From Macrostomum lignano (Eukaryota), in contig NIVC01001650.1 in the NCBI GenBank assembly GCA_002269645.1, forward strand, positions 1 to 64,000: a DNA stretch of 64,000 nucleotides, read 5' to 3'. A program made the position numbers and the translations under genes. Under the pieces are notes generated by a model. The model was not told the DNA's origin and did not search any database. It saw only the letters and a list, made by a program, of their open reading frames with translations. Positions 9,101-50,700 of the stretch are shown piece by piece. Position 1 is the first letter of the stretch, and every line of letters begins with the position of its first letter.

Positions 9101-12100
9101 CAGGACGCCTTGAACGAGCGGGAGCGGCTCCGGTCTCGCATCGCCGAGCTGGAGTCGCAGGCGGCCGCTGACCGCGAAAGCTTGGAGGCCCGGCTGGCTG
9201 GCGAGACCGAAGCCCGCGTGGCCGAGGCGCTGGAGAAGGCGGCGGCCGAGGCTGCCAGGGAGCAGCAGCGAGTCATCGACGACGTGGTGGCAACGGAGAC
9301 GGAGCGGCGCGAGGCGGCGGTGGCTCACGAGCGCGGCACCATCGCGGAGCTGCAGGGCCGTCTGGCTGCGCTGCAACGCGCCCTTGAGGAGCGCGAGGCT
9401 GAGCGCGCCGATGATCTGAGCGAAGCGCAGTCGGCGGTGGAGCGCCTGTCGGAGAAGGAGGCCACCGAGGCCGAGCTGCGTCGCGACGTCGCCAGGCTGA
9501 CGGTCGAGAAGGAGGAGGCTCTGGCCAGCGCGGAGGAGCTGGTAAGGGCGGCGGAGGCGCGGCACGAGAAGGAGGCACAGGGCTTCAAGGACCAGGTGAA
9601 GCAGCACAGCGTCACCATCTGCCATATGGAGGAGCGCCTGACCAAGGTGAGAACTTCTTCACTTCTTCTGGGATGCTGCTCTGTGCGAGTCAGGGAGTGA
9701 CGACGGTGCACTGGAAGCCTTTGGGTCAGTGGGTTCAGCATCTCAAGTGGGTCAAGTATCTCAAGTGGGTCGAGCACCTCAAGTGGGTCAAGCATCTCAG
9801 ATGGGTCAATCATCTCAGGTGGGTCGAGCATCTCAAGTGGGTCGAGCATCTTAAGTGGATCAAGCATCTCAGATGGGGAAAAGCTTTTCAAGTGGGTCAA
9901 GCATCTCAGGTGGGTCGAGCTTCTCAAGTGGGTCAAGCATCTCAGATGGGGAAAAGCTTCTCAAGTGGGTCAAGCATCTCATATGGGGAAAAGCTTCTCA
10001 AGTGGGTCAAGCATCTTAAGTGGGTCAAGTATCTCAATTGGGTCAAGTATCTCAAGTGTGTCAAGCATCTCAAGTGGGTTGAGCATCTCAGGTGGGTCGA
10101 GCATCTCAGGTGGGTCGAGCATCTCAGGTGGGTCGAGCATACCTGAAGCACACAGTGGCAAGACCCGAACCCGCACCCGCTGCCCAGGTGGTGAAGCAGA
10201 ACAAGCAGCTGCAGGAGGAGCTCAACCAGGCCCGCCAGGAAGCCAGCGAGCTGCGAGGCCAGCAGGAGGCCGCCTCGGCCAGACGCCGAGAGGCGGCCAC
10301 CACGCCGAAGGTGATTGTGCAACGGCCGACAGCGGAGCTGGCAGTGATGGAGCGCACCGTGGTCGGGCTGCGGCAGGAGAACTCCAACCTGAAGGAGACG
10401 GTGCAGAGCCAACGACAGGAGATGGAGAGCCTGCGCCGCGACCTGCAGGGGATGTCAGCCCGGCTGTCAGACATCCGCGGCGAGCTGACAGATCAGCAGA
10501 AGGAGGAGCTCGAGGGCTCGAAGCACCGCCTGCGGGAGGTGGAGGCGGAGCTGGCCGAAAAGAAGGAAAAACTGGCAAAGCTGACTGAGGTGGCTGAGAA
10601 TCAGGTGAGGCTAGCAATATACCATATTGGCTAGGCTAGCAATCCACTCTATTGGCTAGGCTAGCAATCCACTCTATTTGGCTAGGCTAGCAATCCACTC
10701 TATTGGCCAGGCTAGCAATCCACTCTATTAACTAGGCTAGCAATCCACTCTATTGGCTAGGCTAGCAATCCACTCTATTGGCTAGGCTAGCAATCCACTC
10801 TATTGGCAAGGCTAGCAATCCACTCTATTTGGCTAGGCTAGCAATCCACTCTATTGGCCAGGCTAGCAATCCACTCTATTAACTAGGCTAGCAATCCACT
10901 CTATTGGCTAGGCTAGCAATCCACTTTATTGGCCAGGCTAGCAATCCACTCTATTAACTAGGCTAGCAATCCACTCTATTGGCTAGGCTAGCAATCCACT
11001 CTATTGGCAAGGCTAGCAATCCACTCTATTTGGCTAGGCTAGCAATCCACTCTATTGGCCAGGCTAGCAATCCACTCTATTAACTAGGCTAGCAATCCAC
11101 TCTATTGGCTAGGCTAGCAATCCACTTTATTGGCCAGGCTAGCAATCCACTCTATTAACTAGGCTAGCAATCCACTCTATTGGCTAGGCTAGCAATCCAC
11201 TCTATTGGCTAGGCTAGCAATCCACTCTATTGGCTAGGCTAGCAATCCACTCTATTGGCTAGGCTAGCAATCCACTCTATTGGCTAGGCTAGCAATCCAC
11301 TCTATTGGCTAGGCTAGCAATCCACTCTATTGGCTAGGCTAGCAATCCACTCTATTGGCTAGGCTAGCAATCCACTCTATTTGGCTAGGCTAGCAGTCCA
11401 CTCTATTGGCTAGGCTAGCAATCCACTCTATTTGGCTAGGCTAGCAATCCACTCTATCCGCTCCCAGGCTGCTCAGCTGGCCGAAGCTCGAGCCCAGCAG
11501 GAGAAGCACCGGTCCGCCCTAGGCCGCATGCAGTCGGCCCTGGATCGCACCGAGGTCGGCTCCAAGGACCTCGAGGCCCGTCTAGAAGCCGAGCGTTGCC
11601 GGGCCGATGAGGCTGCGGCGCGCACCTGTGAGGAGGAGCGAATCGCTGCCGAGATGTCCTCGCTGGGTCACCAGTGCCGCGGCGAGCGCCACGCCGAGGT
11701 CATCGCTCACCAGAAGGAGGCGCTCAGCGAGCTGCGAAAGCGGCTGAAAGAGCTGGAGCGGACTCGGCCGTCTGGTGAGCGAGTTCAGCTTCCTTATTCC
11801 TCTCTAGCCTACTCAGTATTTCCTCTGTTAGTGCACTTCTATTAGAAGTTCACAATTTTTTTTCTCAGAATCAGAACCTACTTCCCTACCCAATTTCATT
11901 GCCCAACCTCTCGACTGAGGGAGGATTTGGCCCAGGACAATGCACACTACCTGCCTTGGTCTCAGTCGCATCTCTACCCCATTTTATTGCCCAACCTCTT
12001 GATTGAGGGGAGGATTTGACCAAAGACAATTCACACTATCTGCCCTGCCTCAGTCGCATCTCTACCTCATTTTATTGCCCAACCTCTTGATTGAGGGGAG

Positions 12101-15100
12101 GATTTGACCAAAGACAATTCACACTATCTGCCCTGCCTCAGTCGGATCTCTACCCCATTTACTGCCCAACCTCTCGCGTGGGGGAGGATTTGGCCCAGGA
12201 CCATACACACTATCTGCCTTGCCTCAGTCGGATCTCTACCCCATTTTACTGCCCAACCTCTCGCGTGGGGGAGGATTTGGCCCAGGACCATACACACTAT
12301 CTGCCCTGCCTCAGTCGGATCTCTACCCCATTTACTGCCCAACCTCTCGCGTGGGGGAGGATTTGGCCCAGGACCATACACACTATCTGCCTTGCCTCAG
12401 TCGGATCTCTACCCCATTTTACTGCCCAACCTCTCGCGTGGGGAGAATTTGGCCCAGGACATTTGCACACTATCTGCCTTGCCTCAGTCGGATCTCTACC
12501 CCATTTTATTGCCCAACCTCTCGCGTGGGGGAGGATTTGGCCCAGGACATTTGCACACTATCTGCCCTGTCTCAGTCGGATCTCTACCCCATTTTATTGC
12601 CCGACCTCTGGCGTGCGGGGGTTTAGCTGGGCAATGTACGCGACGCTGACAACGTGACGTGTACTTTGTTTAATTGATAGCAAAATTTGTCACGCGAAAC
12701 TCCTTGATACAGTATATCTCAAGTCAATTTAATGTGCACTTTTAACAATGTACACCCCGATTGGACAATTTCTCAATTTCTCTTCAGCGGCTGCCTCGCA
12801 AGACCAAGCAGCCCAGCAGCAGCAGGTGACGCTGCTCAAAAAGGAGCTGGCCGAGCTCCGAGCCAAGCAGGCCATGGCGGAGACTCGCCCGGCCATCGGG
12901 GGCGCCTCCGCCGGTGACGCCAGGCAGCTGGGAGCCTCCGGCGTGGCTCGAATAGCTTCCTCGGCGGCCGATTTGGAGGCCGAACGGGCGGCGCACAAAG
13001 AGACTCGCGACTGCCTGGAACTGTCTGAGCACACCTACCTCAGCCTGCTGCGGGGCCTGGCCAGCGGGCTCGAGCTCGAGTCTGTGCAGGTGAGAGGCTT
13101 TCAGACATTTCACCCATTCCATCACTGCCTAGTTCACTCATTCCTTCACTGACTAGCTCACTCATTCTGTCACTGCCTAGTTCACTCATTCCATCACTGC
13201 CTAGTTCACCCATTCCATCACTGCCTAGTTCACTCATTCCTTCACTGACTAGCTCACTCATTCTGTCACTGCCTAGTTCACTCATTCCATCACTGCCTAG
13301 TTCACCCATTCCGTCACTGCCTAGTTCACTCATTCCGTCACTGCCTAGTTCACTCATTCCTTCACTGACTAGCTCACTCATTCTGTCACTGCCTAGTTCA
13401 CTCATTCCATCACTGCCTAGTTCACCCATTCCGTCACTGCCTAGTTCACTCATTCCGTCACGGCCTAGTTCACTCATTCCATCACTGCCTAGTTCACTCA
13501 TTCCTTCACTGCCTAGTTCACTCATTCCGTCACTGCCTAGTTCACTCATTCCGTCACTGCCTAGTTCACTCATTCTATCACTGCCTAGTTCACTCATTCC
13601 GTCACTGCCTAGTTCACTCATTCTATCACTGCCTAGTTCACTCATTCCGTCACTGCCTAGTTCACTCATTCCATCACTGCCTAGTTCACTCATTCCATCA
13701 CTGCCTAGTTCACTCATTCCGTCACTGCCTAGTTCACTCATTCCATCACTGCCTAGTTCACTCATTCTGTCACTGCCTAGTTCACTCACTCCGTCACTGC
13801 CTAGTTCACTCATTCTGTCACTGCCTAGTTCACTCATTCTATCACTGCCTAGTTCATCCATTATGTCACTGCCTAGTTCACTCATTCCGTCACTGCCTAG
13901 TTCACTCATTCCGTTCACTCCTCGCCATCGCCCAGGGCCTCCGCTCGATGGCCCACCTGCCCCGTGACGAGCGCGACCGCCTGGCCCGGGAGCGGGAGGA
14001 GGCGGCCAGCCTGCTGACCCAGCGGGTGCGGCTGTTCAAGGAGCGCCTGGGCCGCAAGGAGGACCTCCTGCAGGGATACGAGAGGGACCTGGCCAAGCTG
14101 CGGCAGGCCGAGGAGCTGGCGGGCAAGAGGAGCCATCAGGTGAGCGAATCTCGCTGGAAAGCCGGTTTGTCAGCGAAAATGCACCGGCGAGTCAGGGAGT
14201 TTTCTGAGCTTCAGCACTAAACTCATTATATTAGCCTAGTGATTGGTTGGCTTCAGTTTACTTAATCCATGCGGCAAAGCCCTTGCTGATGCCAAGTCTC
14301 ACTACCGATGTATTTGATGAGGAAGTGAGGTGGTTGATGGAGTGGGGTGGGTGAGGGAATGGGGTGAGTGAGGGAATGGGGTGGGTAAGGGAGTGAGGGG
14401 GGCGTTGCAGGGGGCTCCGGGCATCCGAATACAGAAGGAAGGTGTTAACACCCGTTCCGCTAGAGTGAGGTGGAGAAAGAGTAAGAGAATTTGATAGATA
14501 AATGAGATTTGAGATAGATCTTGAATGGGATTTTATAGAGCTTGAATGAGATTTGATGGAGCTTGGATGAGATTTGATGGAGCTTGGATGAGATTTGATG
14601 GAGCTTGGATGAGATTTGATGGAGCTTGGATGAGATTTGATGGAGCTTGGATGAGATTTGATGGAGCTTGAATGAGATTTGATGGAGCTTGGATGAGATT
14701 TGATGGAGCTTGGATGAGATTTGATGGAGCTTGAATGAGATTTGAGATAGATCTTGAATGGGATTTTATAGAGCTTGGATGAGATTTGATGGAGCTTGAA
14801 TGAGATTTGAGATAGATCTTGAATGGGATTTTATAGAGCTTGAATGAGATTTGATGGAGCTTGGATGAGGTTTGATGGAGCTTGGATGAGATTTGATGGA
14901 GCTTGGATGAGATTTGATGGAGCTTGGATGAGATTTGATGGAGCTTGAATGAGATTTGAGATAGATCTTGAATGGGATTTTATAGAGCTTGAATGAGATT
15001 TGATGGAGCTTGAATGAGATTTGATGGAGCTTGGATGAGATTTGATGGAGCTTGGATGAGATTTGATGGAGTTTGAATGAGATTTGAGATAGATCTTGAA

Positions 15101-16819
15101 TGGGATTTTATAGAGCTTGGATGAGATTTGATGGAGCTTGAATGAGATTTGAGATAGATCTTGAATGGGATTTTATAGAGCTTGAATGAGATTTGATGGA
15201 GCTTGAATGAGATTTGATGGAGCTTGGATGAGGTTTGATGGAGCTTGGATGAGATTTGATGGAGCTTGGATGAGATTTGATGGAGCTTGGATGAGATTTG
15301 ATGGAGCTTGAATGAGATTTGAGATAGATCTTGAATGGGATTTTATAGAGCTTGAATGAGATTTGATGAAGCTTGGATGAGATTTGATGGAGCTTGGATG
15401 AGATTTGATGGAGCTTGGATGAGATTTGATGGAGCTTGGATGAGATTTGATGGAGCTTGAATGAGATTTGAGATAGATCTTGAATGGGATTTTATAGAGC
15501 TTGAATGAGATTTGATGAAGCTTGGATGAGATTTGATGGAGCTTGGATGAGATTTGATGGAGCTTGAATGAGATTTGAGATAGATCTTGAATGGGATTTT
15601 ATAGAGCTTGAATGAGATTTAATGGAGCTTGAATGAGATTTGATGGAGCTTGGATGAAATTTGATGGAGCTTGAATGAGATTTGAGATAGATCTTGAATG
15701 GGATTTTATAGAGCTTGAATGAGATATGATGGAGCTTGAATGAGATTTGATGGAGCTTGAATGAGATTTAATGGAGCTTGAATGAGATTTGATGGAGCTT
15801 GAATGAATTTTTATTGGAGCTTGGATGAGATTTGATGGAGCTTGGATGAGATTTGATGGAGCTTGGATGAGATTTAGCACTAAATTAACTATATTAGTCT
15901 AGTGTATGCATTGTGTATGCATCGGTAGGGTATGCACTACTGATATGTACCGAAATTAACATATTACCCATTCAACCAGGTGGACAGCCTGGCCCAGGAC
16001 CTGCGATCTCGCGGCGAAGAGGTCGACCTGCTGCGCGAGAGCCTCAGCCGGACAAAGGACGTGCTCAACCAGGAGAAGCGAATCAACACGGCCATCAAGC
16101 AGAAGAAGGCGCTGCACTCCGGGCAGAACCTGGCAGCCACCACGGCCAGGGGCAGCCTGGGGGCCGGCGCCAGCGGGGGCGCCCACTGCCCGCCTGAGGA
16201 TGTGCATGCCAAGGTGAGTTTTGGCTGGCTGAGTGAGTGAGTGAGTGAGTGAGTGAGTGAGTGAGTGAGTGAGTGAGTGAGTGAGTGAGTGAGTGAGTGA
16301 GTGAGTGAGTGAGTGAGTGAGTGAGTGAGTGAGTGAGTGAGTGAGTGAGTGAGTGAGTGAGTGAGTGAGTGAGTGAGTGAGTGAGTGAGTGAGTGAGTGA
16401 GTGAGTGAGTGAGTGAGTGAGTGAGTGAGTGAGTGAGTGAGTGAGTGAGTGAGTGAGTGAGTGAGTGAGTGAGTGAGTGAGTGAGTGAGTGAGTGAGTGA
16501 GTGAGTGAGTGACCAATCCCTGCTCACACTGCGGTCACCCAGGAGGAGGCCAAGAAGCGGGCGATCCGAGAGAAAATCAAGCGAAAAGACTACGAGATTC
16601 GAACTCTCAAAGCCGAGCTAATGTCGCGCGAGAAGGACCTGTCAAGTGCCTCATCCAGGCTCGTGAATCTGGAAAGCACCCTGGTGAGTCAAGTTTTTTT
16701 GGTTTATGCATCTCCTCTCAGCACTTCGATCCATCCTCATTATCTACATCATTGCATATCATAAATATTTGTAATTTCAGCCAGATAAAGCGTTGAATGC
16801 CCGAGAATCGCCTACTTAA
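3157..16819 (+). CDS. FHAD1: Forkhead-associated (FHA) domain coiled-coil protein, FHAD1-like, ~1370 aa, 15 exons
   Basis: Exons with GT-AG ends and consistent phases: 3157-3255, 3354-3440, 4029-4876, 5387-5479, 6430-6693, 7134-7599, 8090-8116 (microexon), 9063-9646, 10188-10604, 11468-11774, 12788-13089, 13936-14139, 15980-16213, 16543-16683, 16781-16819. N-terminal FHA (TTIG...HAIIEY...[15 protein letters not shown]...[10 protein letters not shown]), then long coiled coil containing the FHAD1-type motif [29 protein letters not shown]. One 1-nt frameshift near 4740. Last exon is less certain. Confidence 0.88.
4910..5288. repeat. 14-bp G-rich minisatellite (GAGGGTATTGGGGT), FHAD1 intron 3
   Basis: Tandem copies visible. 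Confidence 0.9.
6745..7090. repeat. 20-bp minisatellite (CACAGCACACCCACCACCCC) with 60-bp higher-order period, FHAD1 intron 5
   Basis: Tandem copies; 20-aa period in the translation. Confidence 0.93.
7625..8010. repeat. 14-bp minisatellite (GGGATTTGGGTGCT), FHAD1 intron 6
   Basis: Tandem copies visible. Confidence 0.95.
8338..8858. repeat. (GGAGA)n microsatellite, FHAD1 intron 7
   Basis: Pure purine tract. Confidence 0.97.
9725..10142. repeat. 18-bp minisatellite (GCATCTCAAGTGGGTCAA), FHAD1 intron 8
   Basis: 6-aa period (KWVKHL) in the translation. Confidence 0.92.
10609..11458. repeat. 25-bp minisatellite (GCTAGGCTAGCAATCCACTCTATTG) filling FHAD1 intron 9
   Basis: ~34 copies from just after the donor to just before the acceptor. 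Confidence 0.97.
11880..12610. repeat. ~86-87-bp minisatellite, FHAD1 intron 10
   Basis: ACACTATCTG recurs at 12121, 12207, 12294; ~8 copies. Confidence 0.95.
13108..13915. repeat. 24-bp minisatellite (CACTGCCTAGTTCACTCATTCCGT) filling FHAD1 intron 11
   Basis: 8-aa period (MSELGSDG) in the antisense translation. Confidence 0.97.
14500..15877. repeat. 21-bp minisatellite (GAGCTTGAATGAGATTTGATG) with recurrent variant units, FHAD1 intron 12
   Basis: Tandem copies; same family as 21340-21768. Confidence 0.97.
16229..16512. repeat. (GAGT)n microsatellite, FHAD1 intron 13
   Basis: ~70 perfect units. Confidence 0.98.
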
Positions 16820-22053: not shown

Positions 22054-25000
22054 ATGACCGAGTACTGCATCAGCCGGCTGCTCAGCTCCCGCCAGCCCGC
22101 CTCAAGCGACTCAGCCAGGCAGCCGGCAGCCAAGCGGGCGCGACTGTCTCCCCAGCAACAGCCGGCTGGCCTCCCGGAGCCCCTGCTGTTGCGCGGCCTC
22201 GGCGACTCGTTGAAGCGTCAGCTGAGCAGCGACTTCAGCCAGATGATTGACAGCTTGGTGGCGAAACTGAGGGCCAGCGCCCAGCAGCAGCTGGAGAGGC
22301 TGATGCAGCACCAGCAGCAGCAGCATTTGGTTCCTGCTCTGCCGCTTCCATTCTTTCACCATCCTCAATTTGCCTGGCCCCTGATGCCGCTGCATCCGGC
22401 AACCGCGACGTTTCCCGCAGCTTCCGGCGGGGCCAAGGCGGCGGCTGATGAAGCATCGGAGTCGACCGCTCCCAGCTGCACCGGCGTGGAGAACTGGACC
22501 GGGCGGCGTAGAGCAAAGGTGGGCGGGTTGCTTTTGGAGAGGGTGGATTGCTTTTGGAGAGGGTGGATTGCTTTTGGAGAGGGCGGATTGCTTTTGGAGA
22601 GGGCAGATTGCTTTTGGAGAGGGTGGATTGCTTTTGGAGAGGGCAGATTGCTTTTGGAGAGGGCAGATTGCTTTTGGAGAGGGCGGATTGCTTTTGGAGA
22701 GGGCAGATTGCTTTTGGAGAGGGCGGATTGCTTTTGGAGAGGGCAGATTGCTTTTGGAGAGGGCGGATTGCTTTTGGAGAGGGCGGATTGCTTTTGGAGA
22801 GGGCGGATTGCTTTTGGAGAGGGCGGATTGCTTTTGGAGAGGGCGGATTGCTTTTGGAGAGGGCGGATTGCTTTTGGAGAGGGCGGATTGCTCTTGGAGA
22901 GGGCGGATTGCTTTGGAGAGGGCGGATTGGTCTTGGAGAGGGCGGATTGCTCTTGGAGAGGGCGGATTGCTTTTGGAGAGGGCGGATTCGTCAACAGAGA
23001 GGGGCGGATTCTCATTGGAGAGGAGCGGATTTCTCAATGGAGAGGGGCGGATTTATCAACAGGGGATTCCCCAACAGAAGGGGGGGCGGATTCCTCAGAA
23101 GGAGGGGTGGATTTCCCAGCAGCAGGAGAGGCGAATTCCCCAGCAGGAGGGGCGGATTTCCCAGCAGCAGGGGCGGATTCATCAGGAGGGGCGGATTTCC
23201 CAGCAGGAGGGCGGATTCCCAAGCAGGAGGGGCGGATTCCCCAGAAGGAGGGGCGGATTCCCTTAACAGTACCAAATCATCTCAATACAAACCGGAAACA
23301 ACAATGCCGCAGGTCGGGGCACTGGTCGAGGCCGACACTGGTCGAGGCCGCCGGCCCCTCCAACCAGAGGCGAACCCCGCGCCGGTCGGGGCGGATGGCC
23401 AGGGCGGATGCCCGGATGGCGGCAGCAGGGCCTCCACGCCATGTCAGCTTGCGGTGAGTCAGAGATGGTGAGGCGGTCGGTAATTGCTGGGCAAACAAGG
23501 GAACCGTTTGCCTTCCAGTTTGGGATTTTTTATTTATGATTTATGATTAGTGAATTACTTCTGTAAAGCAAATAAATGGCTTCCCACAGATTCCTTGCAC
23601 TCTTCCAGCACCCACTCTGATCTCCCAGCATCCCGCATTCACCCCAACCCAATTTGCCCTTCGCCTTCGCAGTGCGGCCGCGGAGACCCGGCCGGCCACC
23701 CGCTGTCCGCCGGCCACCTGCGCAAAGCCAAGCTGATCTTCTTCTACAGCCGCTACCCCAGCTCAGCCACACTGAAGTCCTGCTTCCCGGACGTTCGGTT
23801 TGACAAGAACAACACCGCCCAGGTGGTGAAGTGGTTCTCGAACTTTCGGTGAGTCAAGGGACATTGTCTATGACTGACTGACTGACTGACTGACTTGAGT
23901 GACTGGGTGACTGACTGACTGACTGACTGACTGACTGACTGACTGACTGACTGACTGACTGACTGACTTGAGTGACTGGGTGACTGACTGACTGACTGAC
24001 TGACTGACTGACTGACTGACTGACTGACTGACTGACTGACTGACTGACTGACTGACTGACTGACTGACTGACTGACTGACTGACTGACTGACTGACTGAC
24101 TGACTGACTGACTGACTGACTGACTGACTTGAGTGAGTGGGTGACTGACTGACTGACTGACTGACTGACTGACTGACTGACTGACTGACTGACTGACTGA
24201 CTGACTGACTGACTGACTGACTGACTGACTGACTGACTGACTGACTGACTGACTTGAGTGAGTGGGTGACTGACTGACTGACTGACTGACTGACTGACTG
24301 ACTGACTGACTGACTGACTGACTGACTGACTGACTGACTGACTGACTGACTGACTGACTGACTGACTGACTGACTGACTGACTGACTGACTGACTGACTG
24401 ACTGACTGACTGACTGACTGACTGACTGACTGACTGACTGACTGACTGACTGACTGACTGACTGACTGACTGACTGACTGACTGACTGACTGACTGACTG
24501 ACTGACTGACTTGAAATCTCGCTTGAATTTGCTCAGGAGTGAGCGGATTGGGCAGAGTTGCCTCACCCCTGCAATTATTATTATTAGTAATTAATTAACT
24601 AACTAAATCATATGCATATAAGGTTCAATGAAATTCTGAACTGCAATAATTTAGGGCCAATAAATTTCGATGCTTATTGCCGCTGGTGTCTGCAATATCC
24701 GGGTTATTGCAATTTTCCACTCATTTTTTCATTCAGCGAGTTTTTCTACATCCAAGTGGAGAAGCTCGCCCGGGAGCGCCTGGCCACCGGCGAGGGCCTT
24801 CAGGTGAGCAGCGGCGATGAACTCATGCTGGCTCTGTGCGCCCACTTCAACAAGTCTGACCGACTGCAGGTGAGAGCAATCAGGTTACTGGGGTATTAAA
24901 TACCTGTTAGCATGGGTCACTGCATGCGATGTTCTCTATAGGTGTCCTTCACTCTCACTCTCTGTTCACAATCATCTGTAGCGATCATTCACAGTCCTCT

Positions 25001-30589: not shown

Positions 30590-31800
30590 GTAAGAGATTC
30601 TCAAGGTCAATAGATTCCCCTGAGTGAGATTCTCTAGGTTGATAGATTCCCCTGAGTGAGATTCTCAAGGTGAAGGGATTTCCCTGGGTGATATTCTCAA
30701 GGTCAATAGATTCCCCTGAGTGAGATTCTCAAGGTGAAGGAATTTCCCTGGGTGAGATTCTCAAGCCCAAGGTGAAGGGATTTACCTAGGTGAGATTCCC
30801 AAGGTAAAGAGATTGATCCCCTGGGTGAGATTCTCCAGGTCGATAGATTCCCCTAGGTCAGATTCTCAAGGTGAAGAGATTCCTCAAGGGTGAGATTCTC
30901 CAGGTTGATAGATTCCCCTAGGTGAGATTCTTAAGGTCAAGGGATTCCCCTGGATGAGATTCTCAAGGTGAAGAGATTCCCCTGAGTGAGATTCTCCAGG
31001 TCGATAGATTCCCCTAGGTCAGATTCTCAAGGTGAAGAGATTCCTCAAGGGTGAGATTCTCCAGGTTGATAGATTCCCCTAGGTGAGATTCTTAAGGTCA
31101 AGGGATTCCCCTGGATGAGATTCTCAAGGTGAAGAGATTCCCCTGAGTGAGATTCTCCAGGTCGATAGATTCCCCTAGGTCAGATTCTCAAGGTGAAGAG
31201 ATTCCTCAAGGGTGAGATTCTCCAGGTTGATAGATTCCCCTAGGTGAGATTCTTAAGGTCAAGGGATTCCCCTGGATGAGATTCTCAAGGTGAAGAGATT
31301 CCCCTGAGTGAGATTCTCCAGGTCGATAGATTCCCCTAGGTGAGATTCTCAAGGTGAAGAGATTCCCCTGGGTGAGGTTTTCAAGGTGAAGAGATTCCCC
31401 TGGGTGAGATTCTCCAGTTCGATAGATTCCCCTAGGTGAGATTCCCAAGATGAAGAGGTTCCCCTGGGTGAGATTCTCAAGGTGAAGAGATTCCCCTTGG
31501 GTGAGATTCTCCAGTTCGAAAGATTCCCCTAGGTGAGATTCTCAAGGTGAAGAGATTCCTCTGGGTGAGATTCTCCAGGTTGATAGATTCCCCTAGGTGA
31601 GATTCTTAATGTGAAGAGAATCCCCTGGTGATATTCTCAAGGTGAAGGGATTCCCCTGGGTGAGATTCTCAAGGTCGATAGATTCCCCTAGGTGAGATTC
31701 TCAAGGTCGATAGATTCCCCTGGGTGATATTCTCCAGTTCGATAGATTCCCCTAGGTGAGATTCCCAAGATGAAGGGATTCCCCTGTGTGAGATTCTAAA
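30590..31800. repeat. 32-bp minisatellite (GAGATTCTCAAGGTGAAGAGATTCCCCTGGGT) with higher-order repetition
   Basis: Period 32 (31342 to 31374); variant units recur in order at 30830-31340. Confidence 0.95.
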
Positions 31801-32414
31801 CTAGAGAGATTTCCCTTGATGAGATTCTTAGAAATGATACTTTGGCTTTGTATTCTCATGAGATTCTTAAGAAAGATTCCTTTGGATTCGACTCTTAGGA
31901 GGGGAAATTCTCCCATATGAGATTGCCAAGGTGCTGAGAATGCTGTATGGTCACTACCCGAGTGGAAATGGCTTGGAACTGGGTTTTTTGCGAGTCAATG
32001 GGTTAGCCCGTGAAGATTAGCTAGTGCAGTCAGCGACCGAGGCCGGGGTCGCAGGGCTGTACATAAAAGTCAACAGACACGGGAAGTCACTCCGGCTCCG
32101 TTATTTTACTGAGAGGTTTGTGTCTTGGGCGTTGGTGCTCAGTTTTTCTTTCAGTCTCTCCTTGGAAACAAATAATACTGAGTGCTAGGCAGTGGAAGTT
32201 AATCTACACGTTCATTGGCATTGCAAATACGCTTTGCCGTTATATTACGAGTCCCAGAGGAAGTCACGTGCTTTACTTAAAGTCATAAGGAAGCTCACGA
32301 TTTTTATTTATCAAAGCTCATATATTTAACCCAGCTTTTTTGTCTTGAAAACTGAGTGTTAAAATTTATTTGTGACGCTGTCTTGCGTTCGTAATTTGAA
32401 AGCCAGTTAAGCCA

Positions 32415-32760
32415 GGAGCTTGAAGTCACGTGAATTTCTCAAGGTCATGTATTCAATCTGATGCTTGAAGTCACGTGAATTTCTCAAGGTCATTTATTCA
32501 ATCGGACGCTTGAAGTCACGTGAATTTCTCAAGGTCATGTACATTCAATCTGACGCTTGAAGTCACATGAATTTCTCAAGGTCATGCATTCAATCTGACG
32601 CTTACGAGCGTATAATCACGTGAATTTCTCAAGGTCGTGTATTCAATCTGACGCTTAAAGTCACGTGAATTTCTCAAGGTCATGTATTCAATCGGACGCT
32701 TGAAGTCACGTGAATTGATCAAGGTCGTGCATTCGATCTGACGCTTGAAGTCACGTGACT
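32415..32760 (+). promoter_or_regulatory. 45-bp minisatellite, 8 copies, each carrying a CLEAR-like E-box, most with a TCAAGGTCA half-site
   Basis: GTCACGTGA at 32425, 32470, 32515, 32660, 32705; GTCACATGA at 32562; ATCACGTGA at 32615; perfect GTCACGTGAC at 32750. Lies ~100 bp before the hexosaminidase ATG. The repeat is certain; regulatory function is inferred. Confidence 0.65.
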
Positions 32761-32861
32761 ACAGAAAGTTGACGATTTTAGAAGATTCTTGTTAAACCTA
32801 TCGCCGTAAGTTTCTTTTAATTTCAGAAATTCCTCGCGGACCATAAAAGGCACCTCTAGCG

Positions 32862-43785
<10,924 letters not shown>

Positions 43786-44040
43786 GAGGGTTGTAGCCCA
43801 GTGGTGAGAGCGTCGAACTCACGACTGAAAGGTCGGGGGTTCGATTCCCGGTCCCACTGGAACAATTTGTGTCCTTGAGCAAGACACTTAACTCTGCATT
43901 GCTTCAGTTCACCCAGCTGTAAAATGGGTGCCAGCATTAGCTGGGGTCATTGAGGGTGTGTGGCGACCCCCCCCCCAAGGCCGTACGCAGCCTTCAGACG
44001 CGCCGCGCAATGGCTGCGGCTGAGCTGTCGGTTGTATATC
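43786..44040 (+). mobile_element. tRNA-derived CORE-type SINE, copy 1
   Basis: Pol III A box TAGCCCAGTGG (43794) and B box GGTTCGATTCC (43838), followed by TGTGTCCTTGAGCAAGACACTTAACTCTG...CTTCAGTT...CTGTAAAATGGG, resembling the MIR CORE domain. 3' end approximate. Confidence 0.8.
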
Positions 44041-44400
44041 TGGGCATTAGGGCAGGTGTAATCAATAATTATATTACAATCATCGATATATATACTCGTA
44101 GACCGATATTTGACCAATTAAAAGCTCTTAGCTTGATGTTGAACAATTAAATACGCTGCCTCAATAATGTTCACTGATTTGCAGCAGTCCTTAGCATGAC
44201 TAATTAAACATTTACGCCTGTCATCGTATATCTGTACCCGTCTAATCTGTTCTATTAGAGTATTCTCTAATGTAATTAATAGTCCTTGTTAATTACTATT
44301 CACTCGCTCGGAGATTGGGGGTCTTCATTCTTTTATCACAAAGTTTAGAACATCTGTTCATAGCACGCTGAACAAATGCTCATCTTTTGATCTTTTTTCC

Positions 44401-44534
44401 TACTGAACTGAAGCAGTGCAGAGTTAAGCATCTTGCTCAAGGACACATTGTTCCCAGTGGATCGAGATTCGAGAATCGAACCCTCGACCTTCCAGTCGTG
44501 GGTCCAACGCTCTAACCACTAAGCTGCAATCCCT
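44401..44534 (-). mobile_element. tRNA-derived CORE-type SINE, copy 2 (3'-truncated, inverted relative to copy 1)
   Basis: Reverse complement reads AGGGATTGCAGCTTAGTGGTTAGAGCG...GGTTCGATTCTC...TGTGTCCTTGAGCAAGATGCTTAACTCTGCACTGCTTCAGTTC; aligns by eye to copy 1 over head and CORE. Confidence 0.8.
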
Positions 44535-46465
44535 GACTGTGTAACGAAATGTGCAGCAGAAATGATAAAATGGAATCATTCATCGAACCAATGAGTGGAG
44601 ATGTGCCACTTTAATCATTTTAGGCACAGGAAATGTACGCAGGATAATAAAATTAGCATAGCTCGTAAAATCCAAATCAATAGAGCCATCAGAAAGGCAA
44701 GTCATACCAAAATATGAACATTGGGTCTGCCTTCTATCAAAAACAATTGCACGTTTTGTGCTGAAAAATGAAAACCTCTATTCTCGGTAATGTATTTTTA
44801 GTAAAACATGCCCCCTAAAATTTGTCCAAGAAACATACTTTTCCGTTTTTCTACTTAAGTAGTCCTTGGGCCAAATAAGTTGTAAAATCAGTAAAGTATT
44901 CAAATGCTTAACATGTATTTTGAACGAGCGGCTGATGGCAGATCTGCGTGCTGCATCCATGTACAGGTTAAGTAGAAGGCTCAACATGTACACCTGCAAT
45001 TTCAGGTAAATTTCAATGAACTTGCCGTGGAATTAAGCTGGAAATTATAATTTTGCGGATATGAATTCTCGGTTCTTTAGCACTTAATAGATTACTCATG
45101 GTAAATTCCAATTATTTTAGTTTAAATCTCTTTAGAGAAAGATGAAATGTGACTGGATTGGTTGCTCTCTACCAGTGTCTTTAACTGTGTCCATATGTGT
45201 GCCTACTGAAGGTACAGTAGTAAAATTTGCATATGCAAAGAAAAATTTTCGTCAGAGCGTAAATTTTAATGGGAAGAGATAAGAATGTACATCAGTTTGT
45301 GCATGCCTGTCTGTCAAATTAGACTTGAGTAGTCAGATTGGAACTTACTAGAAATTGCCGCGATATTGCAGCCCTCGCCGCCGAGCCAAGACTGGGGAAT
45401 GAAAATGCCAACGGTATATACAGATGATTTGGCTGCGCTGTGAACAAATAGACTAATCATTTTGCGAACTTAATTAATTCTATAAGATTAAAATAGCTTA
45501 ACTCGAGTGTCAAAGTAGCATTTAAAGGAGGCTGACATCAAGCCCGAGTAGGGACATTTTTCAAGCGCTGGAACCCACTACTGTAACACTTAAACGGATT
45601 CATTTTGTCGTGCTGTGTACATGCTGCTGCTGCTGCTGCTGTACAATTAATGAACTTTTGTGCAAAACATTTCTTCTTTTTGCCTAAGCACTAACCCAGC
45701 TGCTTCTGCATTGTCACTGTGTAGTAGAATTCTTCCTTCTAAACCTAAAATGGAGGAACAGATTTTTGTGAATATCCTTCAAGGGCCTCTCGAAGACCTC
45801 AGATTCGAAGAAAATAGTCAAGGTAACTAGTTTTATTTAAATGAACTGTACGATAAAAGCGGCCGGTAGTGTGGTTGTACAGTTGCATAAGTGTTCGACA
45901 ATTCTTTTCAAAAGTTTGAGTAGTTCATAATCTATATTGGGCACAGCTGAGCTTGCAGTCGCCCTGACAACGCTTCGTCTTATTTGCAGCTGCGATCTAC
46001 CATATAGACAAAATCTCTACACGGACACTAACAATAATGCTAGCGAAGCAGCCCGAGTGATATTGGTAAACTATGCAGACCTTACTATCCATTCATTTCA
46101 GCCCGGTAGCAGCGGCCAGTGCTGGTTTTACAAGTGGGCCTGCATCGCCATGTTTACTGTCTACACTCTATCGAAGTTGCTGACCAGAAAACAACAACAG
46201 CAGCCGCATCTGTACAATCGGCAGCGATTGTCCCAATTGTTGGGTCTGCTGCGTAGGGGCCCTCTTTGGTTGTGGATGAAATTACTAACCCTTAACGAAG
46301 GAGTTCTGCTGCTTCTGCTGCTGGCTGCCTATTTACTGGGCTGGATCGTGACTCAGCTGCTGGTCATATGAACAAATTATTTCTTGAGCTCTTTTTTTGG
46401 CGTAGTCTAAACCAACGTTGAAATTAATCAATAGTTTCTATAGTACGCAAGCGGAATTAGGGGAC

Positions 46466-47755: not shown

Positions 47756-50700
47756 ATGAGTTGCCTCGTTCACTACGAAGTGACTCTGCCAGACGGGCGA
47801 GTTCGGGTTGTCTCGTTCGACAAAAGTGCCAGTGGATACGACTGCATTAAATTGGTGAGCAAAATTTTGCAGTTTGATTTGGCGACCTGAGCAGTGACTG
47901 AGTTTCTTGCTTTCTGTGAGTTAAGCAGTAGTCAAAAAATTCAGTTGGTACAAAAAATCTTAGCAAAAAGTGAAAACATACACAGCTAAGCAGGGATTTC
48001 GGTAAAAAAATCTGACAATGTCACAATGCTCACTGACTTAGATAAAAATAAACATTCGAATATTCGGGTGCGACGTCTAATTTTAGTTTCTGGCATACAG
48101 AAGAGGTCTTGTAGCTAAGAGCAACAATGAAAGACACCCATTTTGCTATGCCCGTCTGAAAATTCGCTTATGTCTACTGATAACTACCAGCATATTGTTG
48201 GCATATTACTAGAGAATTTAAATCTATTTAGCTGAACCCGCCCGCTCCCAACATGTTTGCAGTTGTGCCGCAGTGAGGGCGTATTCGAGGAGGCGGACTA
48301 TTTCGGCTTGACCTATCCAGGCAGCCGAGGCGAGGAGCTCTGGGTCAACAGCCGCAATCGGCTCGCCAAGCAGGTGCCCCGGCCCGGCCGCTGCCAGTTG
48401 CGCCTGGCTGTCAGGTTCTTCGTGCAGCCCCATATGCTGGTGGAAGAGGCGACTCGGTGAGCCAGTCTCTGGGGTGGGCATCGTAGGTTGAGGTCAAGGC
48501 CTAGCCTAAGGAATTCATATAGTAATTCTGGGAGTCCAAGGTCACCCAGCCGCGAGTCCAAGGTCACCCAGCAGGGAGTCCAAGATCACCCAGCAGCGAG
48601 TTCAAGGTCACCCTGTCAAGGTCACTCAGGGAAGTCACGATCACTCTGGTAGCAGGTCACAGGTCAAGGTCATTCTGGAGGCCTATTCGTTCTGGGTTTT
48701 TAGGGTTATCAGGGGTCATTATGGGAGGTCAAGGTTATTTTAAGATTTAGAAAATCATTTTGAATGTCCTCACAGGCAGCTATTTCACTTGGAGGCTCTC
48801 AGGCGCGCTGGCCACCAGCACCCAACCGAAGCTGCTCGCACGACAACCCTAGAACAGGTGGCAAACGGAGCCGCTTACGGCTGTCACTTTCATCCCGTCA
48901 AAGACTGTCAGCGACGAAAACTATTAATTGGAGTTGACTGTGATTCGGTCCTCCTTTGCCGCGCAGATGGCGGAGTTCTGCTGAGGTTGGTGCCAGACTT
49001 TTTTATTCCTGGCCTATCAATATATGCTATATCTGCTACTTTCAATGGGCGTCGGTTTGGCGTTTTTTGGCTAAATTTGTGTTCTGAGTAAAATTTGGCT
49101 TCGGCTGGCTGGTGTGCAAAGTTATTAATCTCTTTCCTTTTTCCTTTCTGACTTTCTTATTGGCTCATGTATACTTTTATCGACCATTAACAGCCCCCAG
49201 CCCTTAGCTCAACCCCCGACCGCGTCTTCTACACGCGAACCCTCTACCCCCCACAGCCCTCCTCTCCCATGTACATTTCCAGCGGGGCGCTAGCCAATGT
49301 ACATTACAGATTGATAACAAGTTGTTTACGGGCTGGGCTGCAAGCGTTCCGCTTTAACAATGGACGTAACTTTTTAGTGGCAGATTTTAGTGGCGCATTT
49401 ATATCCGTATGCTCAGAATGTAATGCATTTTGCAAGAAATTAGCCAGTATAGAAACGCAAGTAACAACAATAATTTATAAATTTAACCAACTATTAAACA
49501 GGTACGCGTTTCCCAGAGTTCAGAAGGTGACCAGAAGCGGCAGGCTGATTTACCTGTTGCTAAGTAATCAAGACGGAATTGCTAGGGAATTTGGTTTCCG
49601 TCTGGCCAGCGGCAAAGCTGCCGAAGGCCTGTACCGCTGCGTGACGGAGACGCACAGTTTCTTCCGCAGCGGCAGCGTGCGCTCCCGGCTGGCGATGCAG
49701 CGGCGGCGGCGGCACCCGCTGCGGAATTCGCCGAGGGTCGGCGACCTTAAGGCCAGTTTGGCGGCGCTCATCAAAGGCGGCGCCGTGGGCAGTGATGCCG
49801 TCAACAGCGAGGCAAAATCCGCTGAGGACTGCTGTGAGCATTGCGCTGCTTGGGGTCTGGGGTTGGTCTGTTTTGTTAGGGTCAGTGGCGTCAGTGGGGT
49901 CAGTGGGGTCAGTGGGATCAGTGGGGTCAGTGGGGTCAGTAGGCTCAGTAGGGCAGTGGCGTCAGTGGGGTCAGTGGGGTCTGGGGTCAGTGGGGTCAGT
50001 GGGATCAGTGGGGTCAGTGGGGTCAGTAGGCTCAGTAGGGCAGTGGCGTCAGTGGGGTCAGTGGGGTCTGGGGTCAGTAGGCTCAGTGGGGTCAGTGGGG
50101 TCAGTGGGGTCAGTAGGCTCAGTAGGGCAGTGCCGTCAGTGGGGTCAGTAGGCTCAGTGGGGTCAGTGGGGTCAGTAGGCTCAGTGGGGTCAGTAGGCTC
50201 AGTGGGGTCAGTGGGGTCAGTGGGCTCAGTGGGGTCAGTGGGGTCAGTAGGCTCAGTGGGGTCAGTAGGCGTTAGTGGGGTCAATAGGCTCAGTAGGGTC
50301 AGTGGGGTCAGTTAGGGTCAGTTGGGGTCCCTTGGGTCAGTGGGGTCAGTTGGGTCAGTTGGGGTCCGTAGAGTCTGTGGGGTCAGTTGGAGTCCGTAGG
50401 GTCTGTGGGGTCAGTTGGGTCAGTGGGTTCTCAGCAGTGCCCTTCCACGCGAGGCCGGCCCCGAACCCGCAGGCCCATGCAGCTGCTACGCTTTCGACGT
50501 TCGCTGCACAGCCAAAGAGGTGCACGACGCGGCCAGGCGCCGTCAGTTCCGTGACCTGCGCAGCGCCGGCGGCGCACTGAAGCCGGCAGTTGCTGCTGCT
50601 GCTACGACCGCAGAGCCGGCCGCCTGTCCTGCCGGGCCAGACGAGGTGAGATTGATGTTCTCTTGCACTACCTGTAATTAGCATGATAATGTAACTTCAT

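What the first reader, a model, noticed from the sequence alone, without database searches (positions are those of the whole stretch)
32261..32862. CLEAR-element minisatellite directly upstream of a lysosomal hexosaminidase gene
Seen: a 45-bp unit repeated 8 times (32415-32760) carries a CACGTG E-box in 7 copies (GTCACGTGA in 6, the last being the perfect palindrome GTCACGTGAC) and GTCACATGA in one; another GTCACGTG lies at 32263. Most units also contain TCAAGGTC(A/G). The array ends ~100 bp before the HEX ATG. Known: GTCACGTGAC is the CLEAR motif bound by TFEB/MITF/HLH-30, HEXA/HEXB are classic CLEAR targets, and TCAAGGTCA is the ERR/NR5A extended half-site. Inference: tandem expansion multiplied a lysosomal-biogenesis enhancer, so repeat number could tune lysosomal enzyme output. 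This is the best candidate for an undescribed regulatory mechanism here.
Basis: partly seen in the sequence, partly recalled or inferred. Interest (0 to 1): 0.8.

Follow-up and report, generated by a model that had tools for sequence, protein, structure and literature searches.

The report
E-box repeat array upstream of hexosaminidase
A 45-base segment carrying the DNA word that lysosome-master-regulator proteins (TFEB/MITF family) recognise has been copied eight times in a row just in front of a flatworm lysosomal-enzyme gene; the motif-gene pairing looks real and ancient, but the copying itself is ordinary in this repeat-riddled genome and no effect on expression has been shown.

Summary
The window is Macrostomum lignano contig NIVC01001650.1. 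A 45-bp array (32418-32759; 7 full units and a 17-bp stub) ends 102 bp before the annotated ATG of a HEXA/HEXB-type beta-hexosaminidase gene. It carries TCACGTGA seven times and TCACATGA once.

The CLEAR reading is plausible:
- Four more T-flanked E/M-box sites lie around the gene's 5' end, against four in the other 62 kb.
- In three molluscs the only TCACGTGA in 15-30 kb lies 17-143 bp upstream of the HEX ATG.

The "undescribed mechanism" reading is not supported:
- 40% of the window is tandem arrays (40 of at least 150 bp), so an array next to a gene start needs no special explanation.
- Other arrays also carry AP-1, Sp1 or CCAAT words.
- The TCAAGGTCA word recurs in unrelated repeats.
- Promoter repeats that multiply binding sites are a known kind.

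Three near-identical copies of the locus hold 8, 7 and 8 units (7, 7 and 6 CACGTG). This is real but small copy-number variation, and less than in every other array that could be measured at the locus.

Binding, the transcription start and any dosage effect are untested. Best reading: an ancestral CLEAR-type promoter site amplified by the genome's minisatellite process. Interest is moderate.

The parts
32418..32759 (.). 45-bp tandem array: 7 full units (45, 45, 47, 45, 53, 45, 45 bp) and a 17-bp stub. Each unit holds a T-flanked E-box: TCACGTGA seven times, TCACATGA once at 32563. The array ends in the palindrome GTCACGTGAC (32750-32759).
   Evidence: Present in all three copies of the locus with 8, 7 and 8 units.
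32260..32286 (.). Solitary degenerate unit-like segment, GAAGTCACGTGCTTTACTTAAAGTCAT, with a one-side T-flanked E-box.
   Evidence: 81% identical to the unit core over 27 nt. nhmmer E=0.066. Identical in all three copies.
32821..32826 (+). TTTCAG after a pyrimidine run, 35 nt before the ATG. Candidate spliced-leader or 5'UTR acceptor (inferred only).
   Evidence: Sequence. The M. lignano trans-splice acceptor motif is [T/C]TNCAG (PMC8629364). No read data were available.
32842..32849 (+). CATAAAAG, a TATA-like word 13 nt before the ATG. It is too close to the ATG to position a start site that keeps the ATG in the mRNA.
   Evidence: Sequence only; inference.
32862..33084 (+). HEX exon 1: ATG, signal-peptide-like start, and a 21-bp coding repeat at 32964-33010. 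The donor GTAAG starts at 33085.
   Evidence: Matches the N-terminus of annotated protein P0001 across the junction ...NSHV|VHVQ....
33064..33081 (.). GTCACGTGA followed 2 nt later by TCACATG: a pair of MiT-type sites inside exon 1.
   Evidence: Conserved in L002 and L003.
34303..34309 (.). TCACGTG at the first bases of exon 2 (exon 2 starts at 34302).
   Evidence: Conserved in L002 and L003.
34302..43701 (+). Remaining HEX exons, approximately 34302-34790, 36193-36312, 40018-40326 (two exons), 41341-41751, 42382-42480, 42831-43175 and 43537-43701. The GH20 catalytic D-E, R and H residues are kept. The annotation adds one more exon at 46093-46371.
   Evidence: Precomputed Pfam PF14845 and PF00728.
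30594..31828 (.). Neighbouring 32-bp minisatellite whose unit shares GTGA..TTCTCAAGGT with the 45-bp unit. This is context for where the TCAAGGTCA half of the unit may come from.
   Evidence: 14 of 16 matches; 2 of 500 shuffles reach the score; the comparison was chosen post hoc.

Best explanation
The array is a cluster of identical MiT/TFE-type (CLEAR) E-boxes close to the promoter. The HEX promoter probably already had a CLEAR-type site, as mollusc HEX promoters do. A 45-bp segment containing it was then multiplied by the slippage or unequal-exchange process that fills this genome with minisatellites, possibly as a 4-unit block that later doubled. The result is eight binding sites about 45 bp apart, at -444 to -103 from the ATG, plus four more sites nearby. 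A flatworm MITF/TFEB-like bHLH-zipper factor would bind them and drive or condition HEX transcription, for example with feeding or starvation.

Shown: the array, the motifs, the gene's identity, the variation among copies of the locus, the enrichment of sites outside the array, and the mollusc parallels.

Inferred: which factor binds, that the sites are used, where transcription starts, and that copy number affects output. The amplification itself need not have been selected.
For: - The motif equals the 8-bp ChIP consensus TCACGTGA of MITF, TFE3 and TFEB. The CACATG variants equal TCATGTGA, which the same family also binds (PMC12828906).
- CLEAR sites lie within about 200 bp of start sites (PMC10626434).
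- The gene is a HEXA/HEXB-type GH20 enzyme.
- Only 1 of 40 arrays has CACGTG.
- Four extra T-flanked sites lie in 1.86 kb around the 5' end, against four in the other 61.8 kb.
- All sites are kept in three copies of the locus.
- The promoter kilobase diverges 0.37-0.56% between copies, against about 1.1% overall.
- Lottia, Pinctada and Solemya each have their locus's only TCACGTGA at -143, -46, and -34/-17 from the HEX ATG. M-box words lie next to it in two species, and Solemya has a 17-bp tandem duplicate.
- The MITF family is present across lophotrochozoans, and a Mitfl1 gene is described in a planarian.
- The unit and its flanks are single-copy in the 130 kb held, so a transposon origin is not indicated.
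Against: - There is no binding, expression or start-site evidence.
- Arrays are everywhere here (40% of the window), so the position alone means little.
- Other arrays carry AP-1, Sp1, CCAAT or TEAD words by chance.
- Within the array the E-box is not significantly better conserved than the rest of the unit: about 1 change in 64 sites against about 16 in 259 (my hand count from the alignment; no significance test was run, and I estimate P at about 0.2).
- One copy of the locus has lost a further CACGTG.
- Rotifer, schistosome, tubeworm and amphioxus HEX loci show no such site within -1000 to +300 of the annotated ATG.
- In Drosophila the Mitf targets found were mainly V-ATPase subunit genes.
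- USF, Max-network, Mlx, SREBP and Clock/Bmal factors also read CACGTG and exist in lophotrochozoans.
- An M. lignano MiT/TFE gene was not looked up.
Confidence: 0.5

Rival explanations
1. The E-boxes are functional but are read by another CACGTG-binding bHLH(-zipper) factor (USF, Myc/Max/Mnt, Mlx/Mondo, SREBP or Clock/Bmal). The array would then link HEX to growth, sugar or lipid state, or the day/night feeding cycle, rather than to the lysosomal CLEAR programme.
For: All these families exist in lophotrochozoans. GTCACGTGAC is also close to the USF and Bmal/Clock preferred sites (my own knowledge). Sequence alone cannot tell them apart. In Drosophila the Mitf targets found were mainly V-ATPase subunit genes.
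Against: The T/A flanks on both sides and the tolerated TCACATGA variants fit MiT/TFE best. Mollusc HEX promoters pair TCACGTGA with TCACATGA words.
Confidence: 0.2
2. The array is a neutral minisatellite with no regulatory effect. The E-box is a chance word, or a dead former site, that was copied along with the unit, like the AP-1, Sp1 and CCAAT words in other arrays.
For: 40% of the window is arrays and there are 40 large ones. TF-like words occur in about nine other arrays. There is no significant extra conservation of the E-box within the array (my hand count). Unit loss and E-box loss are seen among copies of the locus. The reading was made post hoc.
Against: An 8-9-mer match in the one array next to the HEX start has probability of about 0.001-0.002 (my arithmetic). 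Sites outside the array are independently enriched. Three molluscs show the same motif at the same place. This array is older, with 86% unit identity, and far more length-stable among copies than its neighbours.
Confidence: 0.2
3. Each unit is a composite module: an E-box plus an extended nuclear-receptor half-site (TCAAGGTCA) for an ERR/NR5A-type receptor.
For: TCAAGGTCA is present in five units and TCAAGGTCG in two, at a fixed 5-bp gap after the 8-bp E-box TCACGTGA.
Against: The same 9-mer occurs in the 32-bp array (30601, 30697) and in the 22-bp array at 48602-48664. The half of the unit that carries it resembles the neighbouring repeat family. Two units have the G variant. No such word lies next to the mollusc sites.
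Confidence: 0.05
4. The array acts other than as an activator platform: as a decoy that soaks up the factor, as a boundary, or as part of a transcribed outron/5'UTR with an RNA-level role.
For: Repeated sites can act as decoys in a synthetic yeast system (PMC3322331 abstract). A YTNCAG acceptor 35 nt before the ATG means the array could be transcribed and then spliced away.
Against: Eight sites per locus is a small sink. There is no evidence on transcription or structure. The position fits a promoter better.
Confidence: 0.05

Closest known systems
CLEAR elements of the TFEB/TFE3/MITF lysosomal gene network (vertebrates; HLH-30 in C. elegans, Mitf in Drosophila)
   Same: The same word (GTCACGTGAC / TCACGTGA), close to the 5' end of a lysosomal-type hydrolase gene, and more than one site per promoter.
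   Different: Here seven or eight of the sites are exact tandem copies of one 45-bp unit rather than scattered sites. The organism is a flatworm in which no MiT/TFE target is known. Binding and the nutrient response are untested.
Promoter minisatellites/VNTRs whose unit carries a transcription-factor site (e.g. human MNS16A with GATA-1 sites, PMC5438627; promoter repeats as expression modifiers, PMC4857002, PMC3899988)
   Same: A 10-100 bp unit with a binding site, head-to-tail next to a promoter, with a copy number that differs between copies of the locus.
   Different: No link between copy number and expression has been measured. The variation seen is between three duplicated or allelic contigs of one assembly, not a population.
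Synthetic multimerised CLEAR reporters (e.g. 4xCLEAR-luciferase; from my own knowledge, not checked here)
   Same: Several CLEAR boxes in tandem in front of a minimal promoter.
   Different: This one is natural, has 45-bp spacing with extra conserved sequence, and has eight copies.
Mollusc HEX promoters found here (Lottia L005, Pinctada L006, Solemya L009)
   Same: TCACGTGA, with or without TCACATGA, within 150 bp upstream of the HEX ATG. Solemya even has a 17-bp tandem duplicate of the site.
   Different: Two or three sites in the molluscs, against eight in a regular array plus four others in M. lignano.

Membership tests
CLEAR-network target promoter | Carries the CLEAR box (GTCACGTGAC; core TCACGTGA) | tested here: met
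   TCACGTGA seven times in the array, the full palindrome once, and further sites at 32264, 33065 and 34303. Consensus taken from PMC12828906 and PMC10626434.
CLEAR-network target promoter | Site lies within about 200 bp of the transcription start | tested here: inconclusive
   The array is -444 to -103 from the ATG. The start site is unknown, and a candidate spliced-leader acceptor at 32821-32826 could put it further upstream.
CLEAR-network target promoter | Gene encodes a lysosomal or autophagy protein | tested here: inconclusive
   The gene is a clear HEXA/HEXB-type GH20 enzyme with a signal-peptide-like start. Its cellular location in the worm was not testable.
CLEAR-network target promoter | Bound and activated by a MiT/TFE factor; induced by starvation or TOR inhibition | not testable with these tools
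   Needs ChIP or CUT&RUN, RNAi and a reporter.
CLEAR-network target promoter | The organism has a MiT/TFE factor | not tested
   A Mitfl1 gene is described in the planarian Schmidtea, and the MITF family is present in molluscs, annelids and a brachiopod. The M. lignano gene was not looked up.
Minisatellite / VNTR | Head-to-tail copies of a 10-100 bp unit | tested here: met
   Period 45, 7.4 copies, 86% matches.
Minisatellite / VNTR | Copy number varies between alleles or copies | tested here: met
   8, 7 and 8 units in NIVC01001650, NIVC01003788 and NIVC01003661.
Expression-tuning promoter repeat | Expression changes with copy number | not testable with these tools
   No expression data per copy of the locus. 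Needs reporters with 1-8 units.
ERR/NR5A extended half-site (TCAAGGTCA) element | The word is specific to this element rather than generic repeat sequence | tested here: not met
   The same 9-mer occurs at 30601 and 30697 (32-bp array) and at 48602, 48616 and 48664 (22-bp array). The unit half resembles the 32-bp repeat.
Transposon-borne satellite | The unit or its flanks are dispersed, or terminal repeats are present | tested here: not met
   No other copy in the window, L002 or L003 apart from the orthologous position. The only inverted repeats are the E-box palindromes. The whole genome was not searchable.

The most novel reading that the evidence does not exclude
In M. lignano the genome-wide minisatellite process routinely captures working promoter sites. 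This CLEAR array would then be a real, copy-number-variable dial on lysosomal hydrolase output: more units would mean a stronger or steeper response to feeding state. Paralogous or allelic HEX copies would differ in expression because of their 6-7 intact boxes, and repeat turnover would be a major source of cis-regulatory variation in this species.
Probability: 0.15. Interest if true: 0.65.

Novelty: new member of a known kind. Interest (0 to 1): 0.35.

Why it matters
If the sites work, this is the first candidate CLEAR-type target in a flatworm. Together with the mollusc promoters, it suggests that the pairing of HEX with the MiT/TFE motif is shared by vertebrates, molluscs and flatworms. That is wider than the Drosophila picture, where the targets found were mainly V-ATPase genes.

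It would also give M. lignano, which can be made transgenic, a compact natural "8xCLEAR" promoter to use as a reporter of lysosomal or nutrient state, and a clean case for asking how site number shapes output.

If the sites do not work, the array is a caution: in a genome that is 15-40% tandem repeats, factor-like words in arrays are expected.

Tried and rejected
- **First protein search.** A search with one exon found nothing. The concatenated exons then identified the organism and gene.
- **Orthologue look-ups.** Look-ups for the Lingula and Dimorphilus HEX proteins failed. Schistosoma and Lamellibrachia gene models are very long (34-46 kb), so their negative result is weak.
- **Metagenome scan.** A scan for the unit core found nothing.
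- **Gene identifier.** No paper in the library mentions Mlig033111.
- **Prior literature.** In a search combining repeat terms with TFEB, CLEAR motif or MITF, none of the 12 papers listed describes a natural minisatellite carrying CLEAR sites.
- **Transposon origin.** Rejected for lack of dispersed copies or terminal repeats.
- **Other features in the window.** No tRNA gene and no spliced-leader RNA gene are present.
- **Selection within the array.** My hand count of changes (1 in 64 E-box sites, about 16 in 259 other sites) was too small to show constraint.
- **Conservation among paralogues.** Lower divergence in the promoter kilobase is suggestive only, because divergence is very patchy along the locus, from 0 to 6% per block.
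- **Link to the 32-bp repeat.** The similarity was noticed post hoc and would not survive correction for 39 possible comparisons.
- **Unused resources.** The third protein search and the structure tools were left unused.

Full report
**Where the window comes from.** The concatenated HEX exons hit a Macrostomum lignano protein at 89% identity over the whole query: PAA65465.1, BOX15_Mlig033111g1. That figure reflects my rough exon joins. The gene lies on contig NIVC01001650.1 of assembly GCA_002269645.1 (Mlig_3_7) and starts at record position 32862, the same coordinate as in the window. The window is therefore the first 64 kb of that contig. M. lignano is a free-living flatworm. More than half of its genome is repetitive, 15% is simple or tandem repeats, many mRNAs are trans-spliced, and transgenesis is available (PMC5730564).

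**The observation.**
- TRF finds a 45-bp array at 32418-32758 with 7.4 copies and 86% matches.
- The units are 45, 45, 47, 45, 53, 45 and 45 bp, plus a 17-bp stub.
- CACGTG occurs seven times. GTCACGTGA occurs six times, ATCACGTGA once and GTCACATGA once. The last copy is GTCACGTGAC, and GTCACGTG is also at 32263.
- TCAAGGTCA occurs in five units and TCAAGGTCG in two.
- The annotated protein begins [11 protein letters not shown], which is the ATG at 32862. Its sequence crosses an exon junction from 33084 (donor GTAAG) to 34302. The "HEX ATG" is therefore the database model's start, and the array ends 102 bp before it.
- The closest solved structures are human HEXB and HEXA (E about 5e-59). The catalytic Asp-Glu, Arg and His positions are kept, although the local motifs read DTPDH and GMDE.

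- 40% of the window is tandem arrays. There are 52 arrays, 40 of them at least 150 bp, or about one per 1.6 kb. An array next to a gene start therefore needs no special explanation here.
- Arrays also carry other factor-like words: TGAGTCA 25 times in a HEX intron array, and GGGCGG, CCAAT, GGAATG and CAGGTG elsewhere.
- TCAAGGTCA also occurs in the neighbouring 32-bp array and in a 22-bp array at 48.6 kb.
- The half of the unit that carries TCAAGGTCA matches the 32-bp repeat in 14 of 16 positions. Two of 500 shuffles reach that score, but the comparison was chosen post hoc.

I therefore give the nuclear-receptor reading little weight.

**Why the E-box reading still stands.**
- This is the only one of the 40 arrays with CACGTG. 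A 45-bp unit holding TCACGTGA has a probability of about 0.001-0.002 (my arithmetic).
- Outside the array there are four more T-flanked E/M-box sites around the 5' end: 32264; 33065 and 33075 in exon 1; and 34303 at the start of exon 2. The other 61.8 kb holds only four (Poisson P about 8e-6; the bounds were chosen after seeing the sites).
- TCACGTGA is the shared ChIP consensus of MITF, TFE3 and TFEB, and TCATGTGA (the reverse complement of TCACATGA) is also bound by that family (PMC12828906).
- CLEAR sites lie within about 200 bp of start sites (PMC10626434).

**Related loci within the species.** The assembly holds three near-identical copies of the locus: the window, L002 and L003. This fits the known duplication in the sequenced DV1 line.
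- All three copies have the array. L002 lacks one unit, which leaves 7 units, all with CACGTG. L003 has 8 units, with a second CACGTG changed to CACATG.
- Non-repeat divergence is about 1.1% overall and very patchy. The promoter kilobase (31843-32949) differs by 0.37-0.56%.
- The other arrays that could be measured at the locus change length more between copies, several of them 2- to 7-fold. This array changes by one unit.
- Units differ from each other by far more (86% matches) than the copies of the locus do. The array therefore predates the duplication and is comparatively stable.
- The data are too few to show selection. The E-box has 1 change in 64 sites against about 16 in 259 for the rest of the unit (my hand count; no test was run).
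- A 190-bp offset gives 92% identity against 86% at a 90-bp offset, which hints at a doubled 4-unit block.
- Neither the unit nor its flanks occur elsewhere in the 130 kb held.

**Related loci in other species.** I fetched HEX loci from seven other animals.
- In Lottia the only TCACGTGA in 15 kb lies at -143 from the ATG, with TCACATGA at -156. Both are in the 456-bp spacer between two divergent HEX genes.
- In Pinctada the only TCACGTGA in 19 kb lies at -46, flanked by TCACATG at -62 and -25.
- In Solemya the only two copies in 30 kb lie at -34 and -17, inside a 17-bp tandem duplicate.
- The expectation is about 0.01-0.02 per 1.3 kb in each case.
- Adineta, Schistosoma, Lamellibrachia and Branchiostoma show none within -1000 to +300 of the annotated ATG. 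Two of those gene models are doubtful.

The HEX-CLEAR pairing therefore exists in molluscs as well as in vertebrates. That raises the prior that the flatworm sites are real, and it shows that small tandem duplications of the site recur.

**The factor.** MITF-family genes are present across lophotrochozoans and a Mitfl1 gene is described in a planarian. USF, Max, Mlx, SREBP, Clock and Bmal are present too. In Drosophila the Mitf targets found were mainly V-ATPase subunit genes. The M. lignano gene was not looked up.

**Promoter anatomy.** TTTCAG at 32821-32826 follows a pyrimidine run and matches the species' trans-splice acceptor motif YTNCAG. If it is used, the 5'UTR is 35 nt and the start site lies upstream, in or beyond the array. 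If it is not used, the start lies between the array and the ATG. Either position is compatible with an activator platform. No read data were available.

**Verdict.** The most likely reading (about 0.5) is an ancestral CLEAR-type promoter site amplified by the genome's ordinary minisatellite process. This gives a cluster of eight identical sites, plus four others, that a MiT/TFE-like factor uses to drive HEX.
- Another CACGTG-binding factor: about 0.2.
- A neutral array with no effect: about 0.2.
- An E-box plus nuclear-receptor module: 0.05.
- A decoy or RNA-level role: 0.05.

Promoter repeats that multiply binding sites are a known kind (PMC5438627, PMC4857002, PMC3899988). None of the 12 papers listed by a search combining repeat terms with TFEB, CLEAR motif or MITF describes a natural minisatellite carrying CLEAR sites. 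I therefore rate this a new member of a known kind, of moderate interest, and directly testable in this species.

Noticed in passing
window 41727-41910: A 31-bp minisatellite repeats the last 24 nt of a HEX exon together with its GTGAGG splice donor six times (GCTGGTGGTGTACTTTGCCAACAG|GTGAGGG). That gives six tandem donors, and only the first keeps the reading frame. The array is about 187 bp in L002 and about 602 bp in L003.
   Followed up: partly
window 32964-33010 (exon 1): A coding 21-bp repeat ([14 protein letters not shown]) is 47 bp here but 110 bp in L002 and L003. The annotated proteins are 757 aa and 778 aa. This HEX has an unusually long, variable N-terminal extension before the conserved WPxP start.
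   Followed up: partly
window, whole; L002, L003: 40% of the window is tandem arrays, with 40 arrays of at least 150 bp. Between the three 99%-identical copies of the locus, individual arrays differ up to 7-fold in length (for example 671, 191 and 1418 bp at 36331-37001).
   Followed up: yes
window 37298-38106: A 23-bp intronic array carries the AP-1-like word TGAGTCA about 25 times. Other arrays carry GGGCGG (22521-23262), CCAAT (10608-11457), GGAATG (13109-13919) and CAGGTG (41727-41910). I used these as a control for chance factor-like words.
   Followed up: partly
L005 4545-5000; L006 4930-5000; L009 4960-5000: Mollusc HEX promoters share a compact arrangement, ATCACATG...ATCACGTGAT, just upstream of the ATG. 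In Lottia it sits between two divergently transcribed HEX genes. In Solemya the site is a 17-bp tandem duplicate.
   Followed up: partly
window 41380-41706: The HEX catalytic-domain motifs read DTPDH and HLGMDEV, where human HEXB has DTPGH and HLGGDEV. The catalytic Asp-Glu pair is kept.
   Followed up: no
window 43537-46371: The database gene model continues past the GH20 domain into two further exons (43537-43701 and 46093-46371). These add about 140 residues with a hydrophobic tail. This is either a real membrane anchor or a fused gene model.
   Followed up: no
window 43750-43940 and 44390-44520: Two related segments, whose translations share KQCRVK.LAQGH, look to me like SINE-type elements downstream of HEX. 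I did not test that reading. ARAGORN calls no tRNA gene in the window.
   Followed up: no
window 4100-16200 (+ strand): The upstream neighbour looks like a long coiled-coil protein gene, and nearly every intron is filled by a different minisatellite. The TCACGTGA at 9073 sits at the edge of one of its exons, not at a promoter.
   Followed up: no
window 32418-32759: The array is more self-similar at an offset of 190 bp (92%) than at 90 bp (86%). This suggests a 4-unit block that doubled.
   Followed up: partly
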